Sequence record: MK568540.2
DNA: 64,000 nucleotides
Strand: one strand, 5' to 3'
The position numbers and the translations under genes are program-made. The notes under the pieces are model-generated. The model was given only the letters and a program-made list of their open reading frames with translations, was not told where the DNA came from and made no database searches. Positions 9,084 to 33,039 of this stretch are shown here, in pieces (the first letter of the stretch is position 1; the number at the start of each line of letters is the position of its first letter).

Positions 9084-10354
9084 TATTTCTTGCTCCCCGC
9101 AACTGCTACATTCATCGACGAATCACTTGATAATTCAAGCGTAGTAATGAATGAATTAGGCTCAACGCGATGCTTCAATTCATGAACAATCCATTTCCCT
9201 GACACATCAAGACTCGAATGGTTGTCACCAGTTACTGCGTGATAGTCAAGAAACACAACATCACCAACTGTAATGTTCGTATTACCTGGTATTTCTACAA
9301 GTATCTGTTTTGCATTCAAGTACGTTTCTTCCATTAATGAAACGCCATGAACAGACCCCAAAGGGTGTTTATTGTCATGCTCGTAAAAGCCGTCGTTTGA
9401 TATCAATTGAATGCTATTCAACGGTTGTTCGGTTACTGGAACTTCACTAGGAAATTCTGATTCGCTCGTGTACATATGAGCTTTGTCATTTAAAATCCCA
9501 ACCTTTTCAATATAATCACCACGACGAACATCTTTAGTCGTCAACTTTTTGCGAATTAAACTATGAGAATATGTTCTAGAACCGAATAAACCACTAGAAA
9601 TCTCATGCATATTAGACTGTTCTTTCACCACAACGCGCAATGCTGTGATTGTTTTACCGCGACCAGATGTCCATTTACCGTCACCTGTATCAGCACCTTT
9701 ACGAATTATATAATCGTAATCTTTGTTTCTGATCGTACCAAGAGACGTGAATTTAACCGAGTCCCGATCTTCGTAAAACATGAACTTACAACTGTTATTC
9801 ACGTCAGTACTTGCATGGTCTACAAGACTGCTGATGATGTCGTAAGGTTTACCGATCTGCGTCACGTAATCACGTTGATAAAGAGAAGATTCAATTTCAT
9901 ACACGGGCTTCTCATCACCCAAATTGTCTAAAATCGTTTTGATTATGTTCGATATACTAGTTTTCTTGAACACATACGGGCGTTTAACGTAATCATTCAA
10001 TGTCAATAGATTATTAGTAAAACGAACAATTATAGTTTCGAAACCACCAGTCGTTGACGGCATTCTTGATATGCCAGTAGCACGAAACGTTTTTCGATAT
10101 ACCTTATTTGCTTGCTCCCCGACATATGAAGCAAAATCAACATCGATAGCTTCAAACCCCGTCATTCGAACAGTGTCTACGATTCCGACTGAATCTGTGA
10201 ACATGAACATGCCCGAAACTAACCCGTCAAGCGACTCATAAATTTCCATGTGTGTGATTTCATTTTCAACAGCCGAGGCGAAATCAACACCACGAATGTG
10301 AATTTTGCTAACCACAAAGTTCTCAATTGGGTTAGCGGAGCGCATTTCAAACAT
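9083..10354 (-). CDS. Baseplate hub protein (gp27-like)
   Basis: 423 aa; hub-type motifs (IYESL, FMFYEDR, PGNTNITVGDVV, SGKWIV); adjacent to gp5. Confidence 0.6.
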   Translation of the reverse strand: MFEMRSANPIENFVVSKIHIRGVDFASAVENEITHMEIYESLDGLVSGMFMFTDSVGIVDTVRMTGFEAIDVDFASYVGEQANKVYRKTFRATGISRMPSTTGGFETIIVRFTNNLLTLNDYVKRPYVFKKTSISNIIKTILDNLGDEKPVYEIESSLYQRDYVTQIGKPYDIISSLVDHASTDVNNSCKFMFYEDRDSVKFTSLGTIRNKDYDYIIRKGADTGDGKWTSGRGKTITALRVVVKEQSNMHEISSGLFGSRTYSHSLIRKKLTTKDVRRGDYIEKVGILNDKAHMYTSESEFPSEVPVTEQPLNSIQLISNDGFYEHDNKHPLGSVHGVSLMEETYLNAKQILVEIPGNTNITVGDVVFLDYHAVTGDNHSSLDVSGKWIVHELKHRVEPNSFITTLELSSDSSMNVAVAGSKK

Positions 10355-10355
10355 G

Positions 10356-10934
10356 TTATACCCCTGCTAATTTCATAAACGTGCTGATGTATGTACTAAT
10401 ATCGTCACGCGAAAGAATGTTAATCACGCGATTCGTTTCATTCTTATTGAACTCAAACTCATCAACTGATACTGGAATCATAACGCCGTGATACAACAGT
10501 TCTCGAAAATCTTCCTGACCTTCTTCAGGTACATTATTTTCCCAGTCGAACTTGTTATACCAATTACGCGGGTTTTCAGGGTCTTCAATCATATCAAACC
10601 ACCAACGACCTTGTTCATCGACGTGATGATGAACTTGCTCATTCCCACCAATATACTGATAACGATAAATAGCATTCTCAGCTACAGATTCATTGGGCTG
10701 AACCCAATCATAAAACGGGTCAACGCGCTGATTGAGAAGTAATATCAACCAATACAACGACGTGTCACCGTACAATTCATATGCAATTTGTTCAGGGCGA
10801 TAATCACCCCTGATTTTATACTGAATCGTCGTAAACGACGGGATGATCTGCTTATGATAATAATTCAAATTCTTGAATATGTCCGCAGTTTCAACCCCTT
10901 GATAATCAGTCTTTTCAAATATCGAAAAAATCAT
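10356..10934 (-). CDS. 53: Baseplate wedge gp53
   Basis: RPEQIAYELYGDTSLYWLILLLN LysM-like motif. Confidence 0.9.
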   Translation of the reverse strand: MIFSIFEKTDYQGVETADIFKNLNYYHKQIIPSFTTIQYKIRGDYRPEQIAYELYGDTSLYWLILLLNQRVDPFYDWVQPNESVAENAIYRYQYIGGNEQVHHHVDEQGRWWFDMIEDPENPRNWYNKFDWENNVPEEGQEDFRELLYHGVMIPVSVDEFEFNKNETNRVINILSRDDISTYISTFMKLAGV

Positions 10935-18353: not shown

Positions 18354-18620
18354 ATGTCACAACAAACTGCTGAACAAGTAATCGAACAGAAAGACGCACA
18401 AATCAAAGATCTTAAAGTGCGTACCTTTGACCTACAAGAGACTCTTCAAGAAGAGCGCAATTCTTTTGGTCAGTTCGTGGGTGTACTAGCTCAACTACTC
18501 GATTTCGATCAGACGCAAGCAAGTTCTCTACAGAACTACGTTGACGAAATCGCAATTCTAACCGGTAAAGCTGAACGTCCTGCTGAAGGCGACGGCGAAC
18601 AAGAAAAAGACGCTGAATAA
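18354..18620 (+). CDS. 57A: Tail fibre chaperone gp57A
   Basis: Coiled coil with LKVRTFD motif; position after gene 1. Confidence 0.8.
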   Translation: MSQQTAEQVIEQKDAQIKDLKVRTFDLQETLQEERNSFGQFVGVLAQLLDFDQTQASSLQNYVDEIAILTGKAERPAEGDGEQEKDAE

Positions 18621-19075
18621 TGAAACTATCTAAGTTCCTTGAAAGTCAGGGAACTTACGTTGGTATCAGATTAGACGAGGCGAGTAAGCAAGAGTTAGTT
18701 CGATTGCAGAAAACGCTTCGTCTAAAAAATCCGTTAGAACCAGATAAATTTCACGTGACTGTGCTTTATAGTCGTAAGCAAATTGATGTACCTGTTGTCG
18801 ATACCACTTTCGTTGCTACTGTTGAACATATCGACTGTTGGAAAACGCAAGACGGCAAATATGCAGTTGTTGCTAAGATGGTATGTCCAGAACTTGTAGA
18901 ACGTCACGATGATCTTATCTCTATCGGTGGTACTCACGACTACCCTGACTATACCCCTCACGTTACGTTGTCTTATGACGACGCGATCACACCTATGCCC
19001 GTCAACGCTGAAGTTCGGCTTGTTGATGAATATCTTGAACCACTTGATTTAAATTGGGTTAATAGTAATGACTGA
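18620..19075 (+). CDS. 57B: gp57B / Acb1, 2H phosphodiesterase (anti-CBASS)
   Basis: Two HxT motifs (HVTV, HVTL); WKTQDG, THDYPDYTPH and EYLEPLDLNW are shared with T4 57B. Confidence 0.9.
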   Translation: MKLSKFLESQGTYVGIRLDEASKQELVRLQKTLRLKNPLEPDKFHVTVLYSRKQIDVPVVDTTFVATVEHIDCWKTQDGKYAVVAKMVCPELVERHDDLISIGGTHDYPDYTPHVTLSYDDAITPMPVNAEVRLVDEYLEPLDLNWVNSND

Positions 19076-19739: not shown

Positions 19740-19862
19740 CGAGTGTTGGTGTAGTGGCAGCACACGTAGCATACTGTAATCAGACATGATTATATTCAGC
19801 AACCAATTTACGCATATCATAGGGAGATCGTGGGAACGGTTCGATTCCGTTACACTCGACCA
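19740..19862 (+). ncRNA. tRNA-like RNA E1 with CAGCAA module inserted in the anticodon stem (loop ATAGGGA)
   Basis: Acceptor CGAGTGT/ACACTCG, D-arm, T-arm AACGG-TTCGATT-CCGTT, ACCA end; 49-nt insert after position 28; 21-bp leader/trailer duplex 19726-19872. Confidence 0.8.
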
Positions 19863-20121: not shown

Positions 20122-20243
20122 GCAGGGTTGGTGTAGTGGCTAGCACACGTAGCATAAACGCAAGCTGTTAAGTTTGTATTCTGCAATCAATTTAGCATAT
20201 CATTTCCAAGATCGTGACGCAGGTTCGAATCCTGCACCCTGCT
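20122..20243 (+). ncRNA. tRNA-like RNA E2 with CTGCAA module (loop ATTTCCAA)
   Basis: Cloverleaf with insert after position 28; 17-bp extended acceptor duplex 20112-20252; no encoded CCA. Confidence 0.8.
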
Positions 20244-20260
20244 CAATATGTTTTTACATT

Positions 20261-20373
20261 GGTGAAGTTAGTTCAGTAGGTTAGAACGCCGGCCAAAAAA
20301 CGAAGTCTGATAAGATTTCATTCTGCATTCACATGCACGCCGGAGGTCGCAGGTTCGAGTCCTGCACTTCACC
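20261..20373 (+). ncRNA. tRNA-like RNA E3 with CTGCAT module in the anticodon loop
   Basis: GGTGAAGT/ACTTCACC acceptor, CCGGC/GCCGG anticodon stem, canonical T-arm. Confidence 0.8.
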
Positions 20374-20383
20374 TTCAAATTCT

Positions 20384-20508
20384 GGAGAGTTAGCTCAGTC
20401 TGGTAGAGCAAAAGAATGTTAAAGAATACTGACAAGCATTCATGCTGCAAACCTTAATAACTAGGTAAATCTTTTTGTCACGTGGTTCAAATCCCGTACT
20501 CTCCACCA
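20384..20508 (+). ncRNA. tRNA-like RNA E4 with CTGCAA module in the anticodon loop
   Basis: GGAGAGT/ACTCTCC-A-CCA, GCTC/GAGC D-stem, AAAGA/TCTTT anticodon stem. Confidence 0.8.
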
Positions 20509-22064: not shown

Positions 22065-22180
22065 AGTCGGGTAGCTCAGTGGTAGAGCACGAAGAATGAT
22101 ACTGACAAGTATCGCTCCAGCACTCCTTCAATTGCCTGTTAAGCACGTGGTCGCTGGTTCGAATCCAGCCCCGACTACCA
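22065..22180 (+). ncRNA. tRNA-Asn(GTT)-like RNA E5 with a 41-nt CAGCAC module inserted between positions 28 and 29
   Basis: Removing the insert restores CGTGC-CTGTTAA-GCACG; acceptor AGTCGGG/CCCGACT-A-CCA. Confidence 0.85.
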
Positions 22181-24051: not shown

Positions 24052-24139
24052 AGCTTGCATACTGCAATTTAACTTAATCTATTGATCGCTCGGCGAACTC
24101 AGTTCAGACAGCGATAAACAGACCAAAGAACGCAAGCTG
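24052..24139 (+). ncRNA. Free-standing CTGCAA-motif RNA
   Basis: GCTTGC-ATA-CTGCAA ... GCAAGC-TG with inner ATCGCT/AGCGAT stem. Confidence 0.75.
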
Positions 24140-24842: not shown

Positions 24843-24901
24843 AGTAATCTTACAGCAAACAATACAAAACTTTTATTTGGAAAAAGCAAAAAGGATTACT
24901 G
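24843..24901 (+). ncRNA. Minimal CAGCAA-motif RNA carrying an anticodon-like stem-loop
   Basis: GTAATC-TTA-CAGCAA ... CTTTT-ATTTGGA-AAAAG ... GATTAC-TG. Confidence 0.8.
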
Positions 24902-25310: not shown

Positions 25311-25424
25311 GAGTGTTTTCAGCAAACAATTTACTAATATTCTTATCGGAAAGAAATGTTTAGGGTTCGATTCCCTTTCAGTGTTGGTATCACTGGTCTG
25401 GACGACGCTAGTAATAACACTCAG
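25311..25424 (+). ncRNA. Circularly permuted tRNA-like RNA closed by the CAGCAA motif (YrlA-like topology)
   Basis: Order: GAGTGT-TTT-CAGCAA, anticodon-like hairpin, T-arm AGGG-TTCGATT-CCCT, closed acceptor CAGTG/CACTG, D-like hairpin, ACACTC-AG. Confidence 0.8.
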
Positions 25425-25428
25425 TAAC

Positions 25429-25970: not shown

Positions 25971-26033
25971 TATTAAGCTCTTATCATGCGACGAATGATA
26001 CTTTGCTTCGGCATATCACGAGCATGGTGAGAG

Positions 26034-26262
26034 AGACAATATACAGCAAACAATTGAAATTACTTAAAAGAAGTGATGATCTTAACCTGGGCTGATTTTA
26101 ACCTGAGCTTGCTTAGGCGCAGCTTGAAAGGAAAGATTCTCTCTGTCTAGAAATAGTCAGATAGGCGCGTCGCTGAAACAGACGATATTTGCTTGTTGAG
26201 AATCAATAAGCTAGTCAACTCCGATTTATGCAAAAGACGAAAAAACACTTCGGTATTGTCTG
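26034..26262 (+). ncRNA. Large CAGCAA-motif RNA L1
   Basis: GACAAT-ATA-CAGCAA ... ATTGTC-TG; several hairpins; 3' block shared with L2. Confidence 0.8.
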
Positions 26263-26266
26263 TACT

Positions 26267-26485
26267 TAATTCGTCGGAAACGACACTGTAGCCGAAAGGC
26301 AAGATACGCTAACTTAGATGTTAGCAGCGATATAGGATGTATCGCGTGGCATTATTATGAACGTTTCTAGTCATCGTCATGTAAAACAATCAAAACTAAG
26401 CAGAGGTAACAGTACCCACTATGTGGTTCCTCACTCAGACCATGAATATATGGTGTCAGCCAGTGTGCGATTAAATGAGTTAATT
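26267..26485 (+). ncRNA. Orphan multi-hairpin RNA with GNRA loops
   Basis: GTCG-GAAA-CGAC, GCC-GAAA-GGC, GCTAAC/GTTAGC, GCGATA/TATCGC, ACCAT/ATGGT. Confidence 0.55.
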
Positions 26486-26494
26486 ACTGCAATT

Positions 26495-26570
26495 GGTGAT
26501 GTAGCTCAAGTGGCAGAGCAACGCTTTCATACGGCGTAAGATCCGATTTCGAGTATCGGTGTCACCTCCA
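26495..26570 (+). tRNA. tRNA-Met (CAT)
   Basis: Loop TTCATAC, T73-CCA. Confidence 0.85.
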
Positions 26571-26759
26571 AATTCAAAAACAAAGAGGTTACGAAGCATG
26601 ACTACTTTACACTAAGCAAGGGCAACATACGCGATAAAATTCGATATGTTGAAAAATGTCTCGCGAATGAGACCAACCCGTTCTTTATAAGAACACTTAC
26701 TGTAGAGCTTACGAATCTACGTGCAATACGTGATTTGTTTGACGCTTCAGATTAACAAT

Positions 26760-26833
26760 GCGGGTATGATGTAATGGTAGCATGACGTCCTTCCAAGTCG
26801 TTCGTCTCGGTTCGAGTCCGTGTACCCGCTCCA
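26760..26833 (+). tRNA. tRNA-Gly (TCC)
   Basis: GCGGGTA start, loop CTTCCAA, T73-CCA. Confidence 0.9.
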
Positions 26834-26839
26834 AATTTT

Positions 26840-26913
26840 GGTCCCTTAGTATAATGGCAGTACGTCTCTTTTACACAGAGAAAGAAGTGGCTCGATTCCA
26901 CTAGGGACTACCA
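26840..26913 (+). tRNA. tRNA-Val (TAC)
   Basis: Loop TTTACAC, CCA. Confidence 0.88.
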
Positions 26914-26936
26914 TTCTTTATTATGAGAAATAAATT

Positions 26937-27176
26937 ATGACTCCTGTATTACTTGAAACTCACGAATACGTAAACCCGAATCAAATTGAAAAGCTTCAAC
27001 GCATGGACAGACTTATGTTTGACTGTTGGCGCGCTGGGTTTAAGCGTAACAAGATTCTTGAGCGTGCTCTTGAAATTGAGTCTTCAACGACTGAAGCAGA
27101 TATCGAAATTTATTTCAAAAACATGTTTACAAGAGAACTATCGCCTGATAGAATCTACTTAAAGAAAACTGATTAA
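26937..27176 (+). CDS. Hypothetical protein
   Basis: 79 aa ORF with SD-like GAGA. Confidence 0.65.
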   Translation: MTPVLLETHEYVNPNQIEKLQRMDRLMFDCWRAGFKRNKILERALEIESSTTEADIEIYFKNMFTRELSPDRIYLKKTD

Positions 27177-27302
27177 TGCACAGGAAGCGCATTCGTTTGA
27201 TGTCGTAAACATCCCAAAGTATTGCAGGTAGCGACGGCGGTGTTGCTAGTAGATTTATCTATTTCTCCAAGACATAATGCAAACTTTTAAGTGTACTTTG
27301 GT

Positions 27303-27379
27303 GTGGCAGTGGGTGAAGTGGAAATACCCCCGGGTTGTGATTCCGGAAGATGCGGGTTCGATCCCCGTCTGTCACCCCA
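27303..27379 (+). tRNA. tRNA-His (GTG)
   Basis: Loop TTGTGAT, C73-CCA. Confidence 0.88.
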
Positions 27380-27391
27380 AAGTACATTTAT

Positions 27392-27465
27392 GCTCGAATC
27401 GTATAATGGAAGTATGACGGATTGCAAATCCGCAGGTCAGGGTTCGATTCCCTGTTCGAGCTCCA
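27392..27465 (+). tRNA. tRNA-Cys (GCA)
   Basis: Loop TTGCAAA, T73-CCA. Confidence 0.9.
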
Positions 27466-27467
27466 AT

Positions 27468-27544
27468 GCGCACGTGGTCCAATTGGCAGAGGCATGAGGC
27501 TTAAAATCTCAGGGATGGCGGTTCGAATCCGCCCGTGCGTACCA
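27468..27544 (+). tRNA. tRNA-Leu (TAA), short variable loop
   Basis: Loop CTTAAAA; 5-nt variable region. Confidence 0.9.
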
Positions 27545-27548
27545 AATT

Positions 27549-27649
27549 CTAGCATAAGCCGCGTTCTATACGAAGCTAGACTACCGCCGTTGAAAAACGG
27601 TCTCAGCCGAGCGAAAGCTGACAGGTGTTAGGGATTAAAGAGTCGCGGC
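27549..27649 (+). ncRNA. Pseudoknotted orphan RNA
   Basis: TCTAGC/GCTAGA crossed by GCCGCG/CGCGGC; inner GCCGTT-GAAA-AACGGT and TCAGC/GCTGA. Confidence 0.55.
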
Positions 27650-27660
27650 AGTTTATTCAA

Positions 27661-27737
27661 GCCCAACTAGTCCAATTGGCAGAGGCACTAGTTTCAAACA
27701 CTAGGAGTTCCGAGTTCGAATCTCGGGTTGGGCACCA
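27661..27737 (+). tRNA. tRNA-Leu (CAA), short variable loop
   Basis: Loop TTCAAAC; 5-nt variable region. Confidence 0.9.
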
Positions 27738-27743
27738 AATTCA

Positions 27744-27868
27744 CTTAGCAACGCGAATCGAAAGAGAGTGGATAGACCTGCTAAGAGTCCCGCTAGGTCT
27801 TTAAATTATCTAAAGTGGATCTGCGAAGCGCGTGGCACACGTCAGCAATAAGAGCAAATATGTGTCTG
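27744..27868 (+). ncRNA. Pseudoknot followed by a minimal CAGCAA-motif hairpin
   Basis: CTTAGC/GCTAAG crossed by AGACCT/AGGTCT; then GGCACA-CGT-CAGCAA...TGTGTC-TG (27834-27868). Confidence 0.65.
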
Positions 27869-27905
27869 AGCATGAGAGCAGCATGCCATTAATTGATGAG
27901 ACGTT

Positions 27906-27994
27906 GGAAGCATGGTCTAAAGGTATGACAGCACCCTGCTAAGGTGTCGGACGTTAATAGCGTTCTCTGGGTTCGATTCCCAGTGCTTCCGCCA
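27906..27994 (+). tRNA. tRNA-Ser (GCT)
   Basis: Loop CTGCTAA, long variable arm, G73-CCA. Confidence 0.92.
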
Positions 27995-27999
27995 AATTC

Positions 28000-28260
28000 G
28001 CAATAAGACATTGTACAGCAATCATTACAAAATCAAAGCAAACTTTAATAGTAATGAGGCGCACTAGCTGCTTTCTCAGTGATGACGTGAGCCTGTCGCA
28101 TTCTCATGGTAGGAAATGACCATTAAGACGGTGTTCGTACTGTCAAACGAAATAGGACTCATGCCGAATCATGAGTATTTTTCCGATGAGAAACATCGTT
28201 ATAGTCAATTGAGATTTAAGGAAAGACGATAAAACATTTCTCGAATGTCTGTGTATTGCA
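28000..28260 (+). ncRNA. Large CAGCAA-motif RNA L2
   Basis: GACATT-GTA-CAGCAA ... AATGTC-TG, outer GCAATA/TATTGC stem, many hairpins, 3' block shared with L1. Confidence 0.8.
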
Positions 28261-28266
28261 CATTAG

Positions 28267-28290
28267 AACCTGCCTTGAGCAGGTTTTTTT
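28267..28290 (+). terminator. Terminator ending the RNA island
   Basis: AACCTGC-CTTGA-GCAGGTT followed by a T-run. Confidence 0.85.
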
Positions 28291-28380
28291 GTTTATGGCG
28301 TTTGATAATTGATATAGTCTAAAGAAACAGTTAGATATGATTCTAAATACAGATGAACTCAAATCAATTGGAGAAATGTC

Positions 28381-29593: not shown

Positions 29594-29941
29594 ATGTTTG
29601 TAATGATTGATGATATGCGTGATATCGATAAGTTCACTGCGCCTGAAATTTCCGCAGATCAGAAGCTTGTTTTGCGTACGTATGAAGACGGTATGAAATT
29701 CGTCAAACATACGAATCTTACAGATATTACTTTATTCATGGACAATGATCTAGGCGGTGCTCTTGGTCATGAGGGATATGATATTCTCTCTCATGCAATT
29801 GATCATCGTAACTTCCCACGCACAGTTGTTCTAGTAACGAGTAACCCTGTTGCTCACTCTAAGATGACTATGATGTTGATGAGTACACTTCAATATAAAC
29901 GTGTGGGTTCTATCTTTATGAGGCAAGATACATGCACTTAA
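29594..29941 (+). CDS. Cyclic-phosphate-processing receiver-like domain protein
   Basis: VMIDDMR and FMDNDLG...EGYDIL, V..SNPVA pattern; early promoter TTGACT-N17-TATCAT at 29532. Confidence 0.65.
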   Translation: MFVMIDDMRDIDKFTAPEISADQKLVLRTYEDGMKFVKHTNLTDITLFMDNDLGGALGHEGYDILSHAIDHRNFPRTVVLVTSNPVAHSKMTMMLMSTLQYKRVGSIFMRQDTCT

Positions 29942-30951: not shown

Positions 30952-30980
30952 GTTTACATGCATTAAAATTCGCGTATAAT
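30952..30980 (+). promoter_or_regulatory. T4-type early promoter of the DUF2828 gene
   Basis: AAAAAAGT-GTTTAC-N17-TATAAT. Confidence 0.8.
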
Positions 30981-30992
30981 CACTTCATCAAA

Positions 30993-31035
30993 GACATTTT
31001 ACAGCAATTAATTATGAGGAAATGAACAATGTCAG
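30993..31035 (+). promoter_or_regulatory. CAGCAA motif enclosing the SD and pairing with the start codon of the DUF2828 gene
   Basis: GACATT-TTA-CAGCAA-...GAGG...-AATGTC-AG; the ATG at 31029 lies in the 3' strand. Confidence 0.85.
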
Positions 31036-32465
31036 TATTTATGAACGCAATGCAAACAAACGATTCACGCACAGCAAACGGTGCAGTTACTCACAGCACT
31101 TCAGGTAACGAGTGTCTAAACTTGTTCTTCGGTATTGCTGCTATGCGTGGCAACGATCAGTCTAAAACACTGTTCGGTCGTGCGTTTGCAGAAAACCCAG
31201 AACTAGCGACTCGCATTCTTTTGTGGTCTCGTGATGTTCGAGGTGGTGCGGGTGAACGTGGTACTTTCCGTACTCTATTCACTAAACTTTGTAATGAACA
31301 GCCTGACGTAGCTCGTGCTGTAATGTCGAAAATTCCAGAACTAGGTCGTTACGATGACTTGATTTCTGCTTTCGGTACACGTCTTGAAAAAGATGCGATT
31401 ACAATGTGGTCGAACGCAATTGTCAATGACAAGAATGGTCTTGCTGCGAAGTGGTTCCCACGTGAAAACAGCAAAAACGGTCATGTGTTCAAGCGCACAA
31501 TCAAGTCTCTTGGCGTAACTGCGAAGCAGTGGCGTAAGATTCTGTCGCTTCTGTCTGACACTGTTGAGCAGAAGATGTGTGCGCAAAAATGGGATGCAAT
31601 CGACTTCGGTAAGTTGCCTTCTGTAGCGTCTGCTCGTTATCAACAAGCATTCGGTCGTAACGCTTCAACACGTTACACAAACTACATCGAGTCACTTCAA
31701 AAAGGTGAAGCGAAGATCAACGCTGGCGCATTGTTCCCATACGATGTCGTTAAGAGCGTTAGTCACGGTAATGCGTCTGTAGCGAACGAGCAATGGAAAG
31801 CTCTGCCAAACTACATGGAAGGTTCTGATGAACGCATCATCCCTGTTGTTGACGTGTCTGGCTCTATGAGCACGCCAATTAACGCAGGTACAGACCGTTC
31901 AGGTGTGACTTGTAAGCAAGTTGCAATGTCTCTTGGGATTTATGTTGCTGAACGCAATGAAGGCATCTTCAAAGATCAGTTCATTTCGTTCTCAAGCGAC
32001 CCGCACTTCCACCAGTTGCGCGGCTCTTCATTGAAAGAGCGTCTTGATAACATGAATCGTTCAGGCGAAGACATGAGTACGAACATCGGTAAGTGCTTTG
32101 ATGTTCTGCTAGAGCGTGCGAAGCGTGCAAATCTTTCACAAGAAGATATGCCAACCAAGTTGCTTATCATGAGTGACATGGAATTCGATCAAGCAAACAC
32201 TGGTGGTGGTTGGTACGGTCGCGGTGAACCTGCGAACTTCGATGCAATCAAAGCCAAGTACGCACGTGCTGGTTATGAAATGCCACAACTGGTCTTCTGG
32301 AACATTCGTGGTCGTCTTGGCAACGTTCCGGTTAAAGCTGGTGAAGCGGGTACTGCACTGGTATCTGGTTGTAGCCCATCTATCTTGACTTCACTGTTGG
32401 GTGGTGAGCTTGAGCCAATCAAGATCATGATGAAAACTGTAGGCGTCGAACGCTACAGCTTTTAA
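31029..32465 (+). CDS. DUF2828-type TROVE/Ro60-like protein with C-terminal vWA domain
   Basis: T.NGA..HSTSG..CL.LF, RDVRGGAGER, IPELGRYDDL, AKWFPR; vWA MIDAS DVSGSM, ST, LIMSDMEFD, VFWN. Confidence 0.8.
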   Translation: MSVFMNAMQTNDSRTANGAVTHSTSGNECLNLFFGIAAMRGNDQSKTLFGRAFAENPELATRILLWSRDVRGGAGERGTFRTLFTKLCNEQPDVARAVMSKIPELGRYDDLISAFGTRLEKDAITMWSNAIVNDKNGLAAKWFPRENSKNGHVFKRTIKSLGVTAKQWRKILSLLSDTVEQKMCAQKWDAIDFGKLPSVASARYQQAFGRNASTRYTNYIESLQKGEAKINAGALFPYDVVKSVSHGNASVANEQWKALPNYMEGSDERIIPVVDVSGSMSTPINAGTDRSGVTCKQVAMSLGIYVAERNEGIFKDQFISFSSDPHFHQLRGSSLKERLDNMNRSGEDMSTNIGKCFDVLLERAKRANLSQEDMPTKLLIMSDMEFDQANTGGGWYGRGEPANFDAIKAKYARAGYEMPQLVFWNIRGRLGNVPVKAGEAGTALVSGCSPSILTSLLGGELEPIKIMMKTVGVERYSF

Positions 32466-32501: not shown

Positions 32502-32514
32502 GTAAGAGGTGAAA

Positions 32515-33039
32515 ATGTTCGATTGGGAAGCGATAGAAACAGCTATCAATAACAGTCATCCAAATAGCACAATATACGTTGGGTGTGATAGTAAGCGTAA
32601 AAGTGACATGATTAGTTACGCGACTGTGATCATAATTCATCTTGAAGGTAGTAAAGGTGCTCAAGTGTTTAAAGCAGTTGAGACTGAACCTGCATACTTA
32701 TCATGTAAAGATGGTATCAGAAGTCGATTGATGAATGAAGTATACAAAGCGGGTGAAACTGCACTAATGGTTAAGCCAATGTGCGGTACTAGAGGCTTTG
32801 AAGTTCACGTTGACATCAACCCTGACCCCACACACAAATCTCACGTTGCTTATAACGAAGCTAAAGGCACGATCTTGGGATATGTTGGTCAAGAGCCCGT
32901 GTTCAAACCTGATGCGTTTGCTGCGTCTTGTGCTGCTGATTATGACGCAGTTCGAAGAGCAGATAAAATCGCTAAACGAAAAGAACTTAGACGGGCTAAA
33001 CGAAAAGCAAAGAAACAAAAAACAAAAGGGCGCAAATAG
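32515..33039 (+). CDS. RNase H-like YkuK (DUF458)-family protein
   Basis: IYVGCDS, RLMNEV, EVHVDINPD..HKS, KPDAFAAS.AAD. Confidence 0.8.
   Translation: MFDWEAIETAINNSHPNSTIYVGCDSKRKSDMISYATVIIIHLEGSKGAQVFKAVETEPAYLSCKDGIRSRLMNEVYKAGETALMVKPMCGTRGFEVHVDINPDPTHKSHVAYNEAKGTILGYVGQEPVFKPDAFAASCAADYDAVRRADKIAKRKELRRAKRKAKKQKTKGRK

What the first reader, a model, noticed from the sequence alone, without database searches (positions are those of the whole stretch)
26034..28260. Two large paralogous RNAs (L1 26034-26262, L2 28000-28260) closed by the motif and sharing a second conserved 3' block
Seen: both begin AGACA..-CAGCAA and end TGTCTG. Just before the 3' strand they share TAGTCAA-N4-GATTTA-N3/4-AAAGACGA(A/T)AAAACA(C/T)TTC (26212-26251 and 28202-28240), with GTC/GAC able to pair. 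The interiors differ in sequence but are rich in hairpins (L1: GCTTGTTGA/TCAATAAGC, CTGTCT/AGATAG; L2: ACTCATG/CATGAGT, CGATG/CATCG, GACGGT/ACTGTC). Inference: a family of ~250-nt structured ncRNAs with a conserved second site that binds a protein or has catalytic function. They are too short for the GOLLD/ROOL RNAs I recall from phage tRNA arrays.
Basis: partly seen in the sequence, partly recalled or inferred. Interest (0 to 1): 0.82.

Follow-up and report, generated by a model that had tools for sequence, protein, structure and literature searches.

The report
Two large phage Y-RNA-like RNAs
Two structured non-coding RNAs of about 230-250 nt in a vibriophage tRNA operon are oversized members of a widespread, uncatalogued RNA family that sits beside phage genes for a Ro60-like RNA-binding protein, so they are most likely that protein's Y-RNA-like partners.

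Summary
The window is Vibrio phage Va3, a KVP40-like phage. L1 (26034-26262) and L2 (28006-28251) lie on the + strand of its tRNA operon. They share a 7-8 bp closing stem, the motif UACAGCAA just after the 5' strand, and an almost invariant 3' block.

Across 11 related phages both RNAs are non-coding, and compensatory base changes support their folds. No Rfam family matches them.

The decisive clue lies outside the given coordinates. The stem-plus-UACAGCAA module also opens the mRNA leader of ORF 31029-32465, whose predicted fold matches Ro60/TROVE proteins. The module (7-nt strand, one base, U[A/U]CAGCAA, then the complement and a G) occurs 74 times on the gene strand in 78 distant Ro-like loci. 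It occurs 3 times on the other strand, about 2 times in shuffles and never in controls, often within 30-250 nt of the gene. It is also present in cultured Felix-O1-like, Listeria, mycobacterial and Campylobacter phages.

Longer members of this family carry tRNA-like arms and hit the Rfam YrlA model below threshold. L1 and L2 are therefore best read as enlarged Y-RNA-like partners of the phage Ro-like protein. Binding itself is untested.

The parts
26034..26262 (+). L1 RNA (about 229 nt), lying between tRNA-Arg(tct) and tRNA-Met
   Evidence: Orthologues from 11 phages are aligned in A2. The RNAalifold consensus has 8 helices. Pair counts: 95.3% paired, and 14 pairs with double-sided change against 4.2 +/- 1.5 in shuffles and 0-4 in slid controls. 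No conserved ORF.
26034..26041 (+). L1 closing stem P1, 5' strand (AGACAATA). It pairs with 26254-26261 (TATTGTCT), and the conserved G at 26262 follows.
   Evidence: Compensatory variants occur in orthologues: AGATAAT/ATTATCT in phage 1.081.O and AGGCAAT/ATTGCCT in F86.
26042..26049 (+). Family motif UACAGCAA in L1, predicted single-stranded
   Evidence: The motif is invariant in the family alignment A6.
26191..26211 (+). L1 hairpin P5 (GCTTGTTGA-GAA-TCAATAAGC), directly before TAGTCAA
   Evidence: Four pairs show double-sided changes (helix 7).
26212..26253 (+). L1 3' module: UAGUCAA, then helix P6 (CCGA 26221-26224 with UCGG 26250-26253) enclosing the 25-nt loop UUUAUGCAAAAGACGAAAAAACACU
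   Evidence: Nearly invariant across 11 phages. P6 covaries: pair 42-74 is GC9/CG4/GU2 and pair 43-73 is CG7/AU6/UA2. Model R1 finds only L1 and L2 in the window, at 98.4 and 88.8 bits.
28006..28251 (+). L2 RNA (about 246 nt), the last gene of the tRNA operon, after tRNA-Ser(gct). P1 is 28006-28012 with 28244-28250; the motif is at 28014-28021; the G is at 28251.
   Evidence: Alignment A3; 98.3% paired, 5 pairs with double-sided change; no conserved ORF.
28202..28242 (+). L2 3' module: UAGUCAA, then P6 (GAGA 28211-28214 with UCUC 28239-28242) enclosing the loop UUUAAGGAAAGACGAUAAAACAUU
28265..28293 (+). Intrinsic terminator closing the tRNA operon, just after L2
   Evidence: It is conserved in D482, F86 and 1.081.O.
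30953..30980 (+). Sigma-70-type promoter (TTTACA-16-TATAAT) of the Ro-like gene
   Evidence: Best promoter match in 18.5-33.2 kb, 11 of 12 positions.
30992..31035 (+). Family module at the 5' end of the Ro-like mRNA: AGACAUU-U-UACAGCAA, with GACAUU (30993-30998) able to pair with AAUGUC (31028-31033), which contains the start codon
   Evidence: Third exact copy of the 16-nt motif. It is conserved in KVP40, nt-1, 1.081.O and F86. Model R2 scores it 17.6 bits. The hairpin is weak on its own, -3 to -4 kcal/mol.
31029..32465 (+). Ro60-like protein gene (478 aa; Pfam DUF2828 + DUF7788; TROVE-like ring plus vWA domain)
   Evidence: Pfam. AlphaFold model with pLDDT 79.8. Top Foldseek hits are Thermus phage phiLo Ro60 (9kop, 9l5y; E 3e-9), D. 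radiodurans Rsr (2nvo) and Xenopus Ro60.
24843..24901 (+). Short family member (58 nt): AGTAATC-T-TACAGCAA...GATTACT-G
   Evidence: KVP40 has the compensatory AGCAATC/GATTGCT. R2 scores it 48.7 bits, but it was in the training set.
24052..24139 (+). Family member with a variant motif (87 nt): AGCTTGC-A-TACTGCAA...GCAAGCT-G
   Evidence: R2 scores it 17.8 bits.

Best explanation
L1 and L2 are two paralogous non-coding RNAs. They are transcribed as part of the phage tRNA operon and presumably cut out of it.

They are enlarged members of an RNA family built from four parts:
- a 7-bp closing stem formed by the 5' and 3' ends;
- one unpaired base followed by single-stranded U(A/U)CAGCAA on the 5' side;
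- an A-rich 3' side;
- an invariant G after the stem.

This family is the Y-RNA-like partner of phage Ro60-like (DUF2828/TROVE+vWA) proteins. In this phage that protein is the product of ORF 31029-32465, which lies 2.8 kb downstream of L2 and 4.8 kb downstream of L1 on the same strand.

Proposed mechanism:
- The closing helix, together with the flanking conserved single strands, is the protein's docking site. In L1 and L2 the 3' side is elaborated into helix P6 with a 24-25 nt loop containing GACGA(A/U)AAAAC.
- The variable interior of about 170 nt stands where other members carry a tRNA-like domain. It probably tethers or gates a second factor, as Y RNA tethers PNPase to Rsr.
- The copy of the module at the 5' end of the Ro-like mRNA, whose 3' strand is the start codon, would allow the protein to repress its own translation when free of RNA.

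Shown here: the RNA structure, membership of the family, the genomic coupling of the family to Ro-like genes, and the Ro60-like fold.

Inferred: binding, tethering, autoregulation, and any role in quality control or repair of tRNA.
For: 1. Structure. L1: 43 pairs, 95.3% paired, 14 pairs with double-sided change against 4.2 in shuffles. L2: 98.3% paired. P6 covaries between the paralogues. Neither holds a conserved ORF.

2. The same 16-nt module heads the mRNA of ORF 31029-32465, directly after the best promoter in the region.

3. That ORF is Ro60-like by fold: phiLo Ro60, Rsr and Xenopus Ro60 are the top 10 PDB hits.

4. Coupling to the gene. In 78 loci chosen only for holding a distant homologue of that protein (42-54% identity), the closed module occurs 74 times on the gene strand, 3 times on the other strand and 2.0 times per shuffle. 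45 of the 74 lie within 1.5 kb of the gene and none lies inside it. 38 control loci hold none. The G after the stem was not part of the search, yet is present in 32 of 32 members.

5. Not a tRNA-array effect. Loci L011 and L021 have the module 27-30 nt after the gene but no tRNA within 10 kb.

6. Cultured phages of four other lineages show the same arrangement: VpaE1, A511, Snenia and PC14.

7. Longer members carry a T arm followed by a D arm. They match Rfam YrlA over its full length at 38-39 bits.

8. Model R2, built mostly from members in distant phages, picks out the 5' ends of L2 and L1 and the leader in the window. All hits are on the + strand, and there are none in the T4 tRNA region.

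9. Precedents:
- phiLo Ro60 binds two Y-like RNAs encoded upstream of its gene, through a 5'-3' stem next to a bulge holding CGAA (PMC12135203).
- YrlA RNAs lie within 4 kb of rsr on the same strand (PMC4201824).
- In Listeria phage CKA15, three very highly transcribed regions lie within 2 kb upstream of the Rsr-like gene (PMC12282133).
Against: - No binding, expression or processing data exist for L1 or L2.
- They are 191-274 nt long, about twice the size of any described Y RNA.
- They have no tRNA-like module.
- The Rfam Y_RNA and YrlA models do not match them even at E <= 10.
- The R2 scores for their 5' ends are marginal (E 0.06-0.12).
- The GNCGAA-like element lies on the 3' side, and is GACGAU or GACUUU in some orthologues.
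- L1 is 4.8 kb from the gene.
- The 3' module is confined to KVP40-like vibriophages, so its function need not be the function of the family.
- The leader hairpin folds no better than shuffled sequence. It also cannot covary, because its 3' strand is coding.
- Genomic linkage would equally fit a motif that binds some other factor of the same pathway.
Confidence: 0.58

Rival explanations
1. L1 and L2 are cis-acting processing or stability elements of the tRNA polycistron, or stable by-products of its processing like T4 species 1 and 2 RNAs (rnaC, rnaD). On this reading the closing stems mark cleavage sites for RNase P, E or III, and the Ro-like protein plays no specific part.
For: - They sit inside a tRNA operon. 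L2 is the last element before the terminator, where T4 has rnaD and rnaC in the syntenic block gene 1 - 57A - 57B - tRNAs.
- The 7-bp stem followed by a single conserved base resembles an acceptor stem with its discriminator base.
Against: - The same module lies next to Ro-like genes in loci that have no tRNA genes at all (L011, L021).
- It also stands in the mRNA leader of the Ro-like gene.
- The T4 tRNA region has no such module and no match to R1 or R2.
- The near-invariance of a 25-nt loop and an 8-nt single strand exceeds what a cleavage hairpin would need.
Confidence: 0.17
2. The conserved module binds a factor other than the Ro-like protein, and the Ro-like gene is merely co-inherited as part of one pathway. 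Candidates are host PNPase or another exoribonuclease, or a phage RNA-repair enzyme such as the neighbouring cREC, RNaseH-like or 2H-phosphoesterase proteins. L1 and L2 could then be decoys or sponges, for example against host tRNA-directed nucleases.
For: - The neighbourhood holds RNA-repair-type genes: cREC_REC at 29594-29941, RNaseH_like at 32509-33039, and a gp57B-like 2H phosphoesterase at 18620-19075.
- Y RNAs are known to contact PNPase directly (PMC12135203).
Against: - Across very different phages the only gene that recurs next to the module is the Ro-like gene.
- cREC and the RNaseH-like gene are not annotated next to it in the A511, PC14, Snenia or VpaE1 stretches. Those neighbours were not scanned with domain models.
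Confidence: 0.15
3. L1 and L2 are ribozymes, self-cleaving elements or relics of mobile introns, with the closing stem formed by the element's termini.
For: - Their size is close to that of small group I introns.
- The 3' end is a conserved G.
- Homing endonuclease genes occur nearby in some relatives.
Against: - No Rfam intron or ribozyme family matches, even at E <= 10.
- There are no split exon halves around them.
- Both elements are fixed at syntenic sites in all 11 phages.
- Family members of only 52-63 nt share the same termini.
Confidence: 0.04
4. They are riboswitch or attenuator leaders, or they encode small peptides.
For: - L2 is followed directly by a terminator.
- A 38-aa ORF lies inside L2 in the Va3/KVP40 clade.
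Against: - L1 has the same core but no terminator, and lies between two tRNAs.
- The ORF is truncated or absent in VH1, nt-1, CZ01, D482, F86 and 1.081.O.
Confidence: 0.03

Closest known systems
Bacterial and phage Y RNAs: YrlA/YrlB (Rfam RF02553), D. radiodurans Yrn1, and Thermus phage phiLo Yrl1/Yrl2
   Same: - Encoded near a Ro60-family gene and on its strand.
- Usually two or more per genome.
- The 5' and 3' ends form a stem next to a loop of conserved, presumably protein-contacting nucleotides, with an A-rich 3' side.
- Tied to tRNA biology.
- Sister members of the L1/L2 family carry the YrlA-type order of T arm, hairpin and D arm, and hit the YrlA model at 38-39 bits.
   Different: - L1 and L2 are 2-3 times longer and have no tRNA-like domain.
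- Their conserved 5' motif is UACAGCAA, not GNCGAA or GGUCCGA.
- They fail the Rfam models.
- The partner protein belongs to the DUF2828 branch, not canonical TROVE (Pfam PF05731).
- They carry an extra conserved hairpin module, P6.
T4 stable RNAs species 1 and 2 (rnaC, rnaD)
   Same: Non-tRNA stable RNAs encoded at the distal end of the tRNA cluster, in the same syntenic block (gene 1, 57A, 57B, tRNAs) of a related Straboviridae phage. From my own knowledge, their function has been unknown for about 50 years.
   Different: - No detectable sequence or motif similarity.
- T4 rnaC ends in a T-arm-like element.
- No T4 record appears among the 60 listed rows of the tblastn for Ro-like homologues. 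The T4 genome was not searched directly for one.
ROOL and GOLLD RNAs of phage tRNA arrays
   Same: Large structured RNAs found in phage tRNA arrays. A sub-threshold ROOL-like RNA lies between the tRNA array and the Ro-like gene of Listeria phage A511.
   Different: ROOL and GOLLD are 500-800 nt. Neither model matches the window. Their architecture is unrelated.

Membership tests
Y RNA / YrlA (Rfam RF00019, RF02553) | Encoded close to a Ro60/TROVE-family gene and on its strand (within about 4 kb in Chen et al. 2014) | tested here: met
   L2 ends 2.8 kb upstream of ORF 31029-32465 and L1 ends 4.8 kb upstream, both on the same strand. The ORF has a Ro60-like fold. L1 lies slightly beyond 4 kb.
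Y RNA / YrlA (Rfam RF00019, RF02553) | The 5' and 3' ends pair into a stem that adjoins a loop or bulge of conserved nucleotides | tested here: met
   P1 shows compensatory changes. UACAGCAA lies 5' of it and a conserved A-rich module lies 3' of it.
Y RNA / YrlA (Rfam RF00019, RF02553) | Ro-binding motif GNCGAA(N0-1)G, GGUCCGA or CGAA in the 5' strand or bulge of that stem | tested here: inconclusive
   GACGAA is present in the P6 loop of most L1 copies and some L2 copies. But it is on the 3' side, and it is GACGAU or GACUUU in other orthologues. The conserved 5' motif is UACAGCAA.
Y RNA / YrlA (Rfam RF00019, RF02553) | tRNA-like module (T arm and D arm) | tested here: not met
   No tRNA, YrlA or T-loop match inside L1 or L2. 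The feature is met in other members of the same module family: L054 9797-9925, Snenia 9545-9672 and VpaE1 10407-10531.
Y RNA / YrlA (Rfam RF00019, RF02553) | Match to the covariance model at its gathering score, and a length of 80-130 nt | tested here: not met
   No hit on L1 or L2 even at E <= 10. Their lengths are 191-274 nt.
Y RNA / YrlA (Rfam RF00019, RF02553) | Physical association with the Ro60 orthologue | not testable with these tools
   Needs RIP/CLIP or EMSA.
Stem-closed UWCAGCAA RNAs beside DUF2828 Ro-like genes (family defined here) | 7-bp closing stem (G at position 2 paired with C at -3), one unpaired base, U-W-C-A-G-C-A-A, an A-rich 3' side, and an invariant G after the 3' strand | tested here: met
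   L1 is AGACAAT-A-TACAGCAA...GAAAAAAC...ATTGTCT-G. L2 is AGACATT-G-TACAGCAA...ATAAAAC...AATGTCT-G. Family consensus.
Stem-closed UWCAGCAA RNAs beside DUF2828 Ro-like genes (family defined here) | Same strand as a DUF2828 Ro-like gene and near it | tested here: met
   Strand bias in the distant loci is 74:3.
T4 rnaC / rnaD stable RNAs | Sequence or structure homology to T4 species 1 or 2 RNA | tested here: not met
   The T4 sequences were read. Models R1 and R2 find nothing in the T4 tRNA region, and it holds no module. Only the position is shared.
GOLLD / ROOL | Match to RF01998 or RF03087; length of 500-800 nt | tested here: not met
   No hit in the window at the gathering score, and none in 19.5-29 kb at E <= 10. 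The size is 229-246 nt.
Group I intron | Conserved catalytic core (Rfam models) and interrupted exon halves | tested here: not met
   No Rfam hit. The flanks are intact tRNA genes and spacers.

The most novel reading that the evidence does not exclude
L1 and L2 are RNA scaffolds that assemble the phage Ro-like ring with a nuclease or RNA-repair enzymes on the phage's own tRNA transcripts. The tRNA-shaped RNAs at 19.7-22.2 kb, which carry the same module in place of the anticodon arm, would belong to the same system. Together they would form a phage-encoded surveillance and repair machine for tRNAs, or a decoy against host anticodon nucleases. The stem-closed UWCAGCAA RNAs would then be a previously uncatalogued, pan-phage class of Y RNA specific to DUF2828 Ro-like proteins.
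Probability: 0.2. Interest if true: 0.88.

Novelty: new variant of a known kind. Interest (0 to 1): 0.72.

Why it matters
Ro60 and Y RNA are best known from human autoimmunity and bacterial stress responses. What they do for viruses is almost unexplored: I found one structural paper, on a Thermus phage, and one transcriptomic hint in a Listeria phage.

- **A testable RNA signature.** This analysis gives a simple signature, a closing stem plus UWCAGCAA plus a trailing G. It marks the likely RNA partners of the DUF2828 branch of Ro-like proteins, which tblastn found in 711 phage records. The signature was checked in 78 uncultivated loci and in single Felix-O1-like, A511-like Listeria, mycobacterial and Campylobacter phages, and it is absent from Rfam 15.
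- **Unusual members of the family.** L1 and L2 show that the family can carry a large domain that is not tRNA-like, plus a second invariant module. That makes the KVP40-type phages a good system for asking what a Y RNA tethers.
- **A link to tRNA arrays.** The recurrent placement next to tRNA arrays links the system to phage tRNA biology and to the arms race over tRNA cleavage.
- **A possible explanation for the 'pseudo-tRNAs'.** The 'pseudo-tRNAs' annotated in KVP40 may be tRNA-shaped Y RNAs.

Tried and rejected
- **Rfam.** Neither the gathering scan nor the E <= 10 scan gives any family for L1 or L2. The YrlA hits at 20345-20409 and similar places are the known tandem-tRNA artefact, formed by the T arm of one tRNA and the D arm of the next.
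- **Coding potential.** No ORF is conserved across the orthologues.
- **T4 rnaC/rnaD homology.** None found.
- **Promoter reading.** The reverse complement TTGCTGTA resembles a T4 MotA box. I rejected this reading because it lies on the wrong strand, has no -10 element, and the flanking stems covary as RNA.
It is invariant and so untestable. Covariation supports P6 instead.
- **Wider search for the 3' module.** Model R1 finds nothing below E = 1 in the 78 distant Ro-like loci. A 16-base pattern in IMG/VR gave mostly chance hits. A 23-base pattern in metagenomes hit only a ferredoxin-like ORF. The module is therefore specific to this phage lineage.
- **An early false negative.** My first look at the 110 nt upstream of distant Ro-like genes found no motif. 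This was misleading, because the modules lie mostly just downstream or further upstream.
- **Single-sequence folding.** The z-scores are only -2.5 for L1 and -1.6 for L2. In a 524-nt context the minimum-energy fold loses P1. The comparative evidence was decisive, not thermodynamics.
- **Leader hairpin.** It is predicted in 4 of 5 phages but is no more stable than shuffles. Autoregulation therefore remains an inference.
- **Literature.** The Burroughs and Aravind 2016 paper and the KVP40 genome paper are not held in the library. What I say about them rests on my own knowledge.
Full report
**1. Where the finding lies**

The window is identical to Vibrio phage Va3 (MK568540.2). It is 92-99% identical to KVP40-group phages (Schizotequatrovirus) across 25980-28300.

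Positions 20.2-28.0 kb hold a + strand array of 28-31 tRNA genes. L1 lies between tRNA-Arg(tct) and tRNA-Met. L2 follows the last tRNA, Ser(gct), and is itself followed by an intrinsic terminator at 28265-28293.

The block is syntenic with T4: gene 1, 57A, 57B, the tRNAs, then rnaD and rnaC.

**2.

Both elements start AGACA(A/T)T-N-TACAGCAA and end (A/T)TTGTCTG. The 16-nt 5' pattern has three exact copies in the window. The 19-nt core of the 3' block has exactly two, against 0.14 expected.

The precise limits are 26034-26262 for L1 and 28006-28251 for L2.

**3. They are structured non-coding RNAs**

Orthologues were collected from 11 distinct phages: Va3, KVP40, VH1_2019, VS1, QD01, nt-1, CZ01, D482, D484, 1.081.O and F86.

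*L1*
- The consensus fold has 43 pairs in 8 helices.
- 95.3% of cells are paired.
- 14 pairs show changes on both sides, against 4.2 +/- 1.5 in shuffles (0 of 500) and 0-4 when partners are slid.
- The closing stem itself changes in a compensatory way: AGATAAT/ATTATCT in 1.081.O and AGGCAAT/ATTGCCT in F86.

*L2*
- 98.3% of cells are paired, and 5 pairs covary.

*The 3' block*
- In both RNAs it folds as a 4-5 bp helix, P6, stacked on the closing stem. P6 is CCGA/UCGG in L1, GAGA/UCUC in L2 and GUGA/UCAC in D482 L2. The pair types are GC9/CG4/GU2 and CG7/AU6/UA2.
- P6 encloses a nearly invariant loop of 24-25 nt.

*Other checks*
- No ORF is conserved.
- Rfam 15 gives no hit on L1 or L2 at the gathering score or at E <= 10.
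- A covariance model of the 3' module (R1) finds only L1 and L2 in the window, and only KVP40-type copies elsewhere.
- A metagenome pattern scan gave only chance hits.

**4. The clue outside the coordinates**

The third copy of the 16-nt motif is at 30992-31007. It lies a few bases downstream of the best sigma-70-type promoter in the region (30953-30980), at the start of the leader of ORF 31029-32465. Its stem strand GACAUU can pair with AAUGUC, which contains the start codon.

The ORF carries Pfam DUF2828 and DUF7788. Its AlphaFold model (pLDDT 79.8) matches Ro60/TROVE structures in all ten of its best PDB hits: Thermus phage phiLo Ro60, D. radiodurans Rsr and Xenopus Ro60.

The neighbouring genes are a cREC receiver-type domain and an RNaseH-like protein. 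A gp57B-like 2H phosphoesterase opens the block.

**5. L1 and L2 belong to a larger family within the window**

A scan for [7 nt]-N-T(A/T/G)C(A/C/T)GCA(A/T) followed within 420 nt by the exact complement found further members:
- 24052-24139 (87 nt);
- 24843-24901 (58 nt; KVP40 has the compensatory AGCAATC/GATTGCT);
- an element of about 110 nt near 25311 in nt-1, CZ01, 1.081.O and F86.

All begin AG, end CU, and are followed by G.

**6. The family is coupled to Ro-like genes across phages**

*Distant uncultivated loci.* I fetched 80 IMG/VR loci solely because they encode a homologue of the window's Ro-like protein. Two of them are KVP40-type. The other 78 are 42-54% identical to the window's protein.

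| Where the closed module T[AT]CAGCAA was counted | Count |
|---|---|
| Gene strand of the 78 loci (1.26 Mb) | 74 |
| Opposite strand of the same loci | 3 |
| Per composition shuffle | 2.0 |
| 38 unrelated loci, both strands (314 kb) | 0 |

- 51 of the 78 loci have at least one module.
- 45 of the 74 modules lie within 1.5 kb of the gene, and none lies inside it.
- Many start 27-32 nt after the stop codon or end 33-92 nt before the start codon.
- There are 53 distinct sequences, mostly 52-63 nt long.
- The G after the 3' strand was not required by the search, yet it is present in 32 of 32 aligned members. G2 and C-3 are also invariant.
- L011 and L021 have the module next to the gene but no tRNA within 10 kb. 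The coupling is therefore to the Ro-like gene and not to tRNA arrays.

*Cultured phages of other lineages*
- Felix-O1-like VpaE1 has four modules just after the gene.
- Listeria A511 has one, with CACAGCAA, 36 nt before gp57.
- Mycobacteriophage Snenia has one, with CACAGCAA, 105 nt after its 'Ro-like RNA binding protein' gene.
- Campylobacter PC14 has one 22 nt before the gene.
- Aeromonas phiWae14 has two in its tRNA array.

*Model-based check.* A model built mainly from the distant short members (R2) finds, in the window, the 5' ends of L2 and L1, the element at 24052 and the leader of the Ro-like gene. All hits are on the + strand, and none falls in the T4 tRNA region. The scores are marginal: 16.7-17.9 bits, E 0.06-0.12.

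**7. The family is Y-RNA-like**

Members of 106-139 nt contain a T arm, a hairpin and a D arm in the permuted order that is typical of YrlA. The Rfam YrlA model aligns over its full length to two of them:
- L054 9815-9925, at 38.2 bits;
- Snenia 9570-9678, at 39.3 bits.

Both scores are below the gathering score of 69.

Published work shows the following:
- phiLo Ro60 binds two upstream-encoded Y-like RNAs through a 5'-3' stem next to a bulge holding CGAA, and forms a complex with host PNPase (PMC12135203).
- In Listeria phage CKA15, three very highly transcribed regions lie within 2 kb upstream of the Rsr-like gene, and the authors suggested they are Y RNAs (PMC12282133).

**8. Interpretation**

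L1 and L2 are best explained as enlarged, lineage-specific members of this Y-like family.
- The closing helix, the 5' UACAGCAA and the A-rich 3' side (elaborated into P6) would form the docking platform for the Ro-like protein.
- The covarying interior of about 170 nt stands where relatives carry a tRNA-like domain, and would contact a second factor.
- The module in the protein's own mRNA leader matches, in position, the small Y-like RNA that sits just upstream of the gene in A511, PC14, L071 and L075. It suggests translational feedback.

Binding, tethering and feedback are inferences. The folds, the family membership, the genomic coupling and the Ro60-like fold of the protein are shown.

The main rivals are pure processing elements or by-products of the T4 rnaC/rnaD type, and binding of the module by a different factor of the same pathway. 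Ribozyme, intron, riboswitch and coding readings are disfavoured.

**9. Novelty**

No annotation, Rfam family or paper that I could find describes L1, L2 or the UWCAGCAA module.

Y RNAs of phage Ro60 proteins are a known kind. This would be a new variant in four respects: a different signature motif, the DUF2828 branch of the protein family, very large members without a tRNA-like domain, and an extra conserved module.

I could not see the supplementary tables of Chen et al. 2014. Some tRNA-like members in mycobacteriophages may therefore already be listed there as YrlA.

Noticed in passing
window 20262-20373, 20384-20505, 22065-22177: Three tRNA genes match the Rfam tRNA model end to end but carry 40-50-nt inserts; the two whose alignments were read (20262, 20384) have 44 and 49 nt in the anticodon loop. 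They are annotated as pseudo-tRNAs in KVP40. Each insert holds a miniature of the family module: [7 nt]-GAYA-[AG + 5 nt]-N-T(N)C(W)GCA(N). They may be tRNA-shaped Y RNAs in which the Ro-docking module replaces the anticodon arm, rather than intron-bearing or dead tRNAs.
   Followed up: partly
window 19742-19858 and 20126-20246: Two tRNA-like elements that both ARAGORN and the Rfam tRNA model miss. Each has a 9-10 bp acceptor-type stem, a D arm, a T arm (GGTTCGATTCC / GGTTCGAATCC) and a large central insert containing TTC(A/T)GCAA(C/T)CAATTTA.
   Followed up: partly
window 25311-25428: TTCAGCAA is followed by a T-arm-like TAGGGTTCGATTCCCTT and a second hairpin. In nt-1, CZ01, 1.081.O and F86 the orthologue is closed by TGAGTGT/ACACTCA (105-113 nt). 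In Va3 I found no exact closing strand.
   Followed up: partly
window 18620-19075, 29594-29941, 32509-33039: RNA-repair-type genes frame the tRNA/Ro block: a gp57B-like 2H phosphoesterase ('RNA ligase', phrog_755), a cREC_REC cyclic-phosphate-processing receiver domain, and an RNaseH_like (PF04308) protein directly after the Ro-like gene.
   Followed up: partly
L131, L132, L133, L134, L135, L031, L036, L044, L068: In unrelated phages the Ro-like gene repeatedly adjoins tRNA genes on the same strand: Aeromonas phiWae14, Felix-O1-like VpaE1, Listeria A511, mycobacteriophage Snenia, Campylobacter PC14 and several uncultivated phages. One of these loci also holds a tmRNA (L044 16119-16481).
   Followed up: partly
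L133 6507-7058 (Listeria phage A511): A ROOL-like RNA (RF03087; 87.5 bits against a gathering score of 99.1; full model length) lies between the tRNA array and the Y-like module and Ro-like gene gp57.
   Followed up: no
window 26263-26356; also 27545-27660 and 27738-27905: The spacers after L1 and between the Leu and Ser tRNAs hold runs of short hairpins, several with GAAA loops, for example GTCG-GAAA-CGAC, GCC-GAAA-GGC and GCTAAC-TTAGAT-GTTAGC. A degenerate copy of the motif (CACACG-TCAGCAA...GTGTCTG) lies at 27836-27868.
   Followed up: no
L003 14549-15175 (phage D482); also D484: A homing-endonuclease gene on the opposite strand sits immediately upstream of the Ro-like gene. The leader there has lost the AGACATT stem strand but keeps TACAGCAA fused to the start codon (TACAGCAATG). 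In the same phages the L2 copy has GACUUU instead of GACGA(A/U).
   Followed up: no
L004 11799-11947 (phage 1.081.O): The L2 orthologue is shortened to about 150 nt. It has lost the UAGUCAA / AAAGACGA module but keeps the closing stem, the 5' motif (UUCAGCAA) and the terminator.
   Followed up: no
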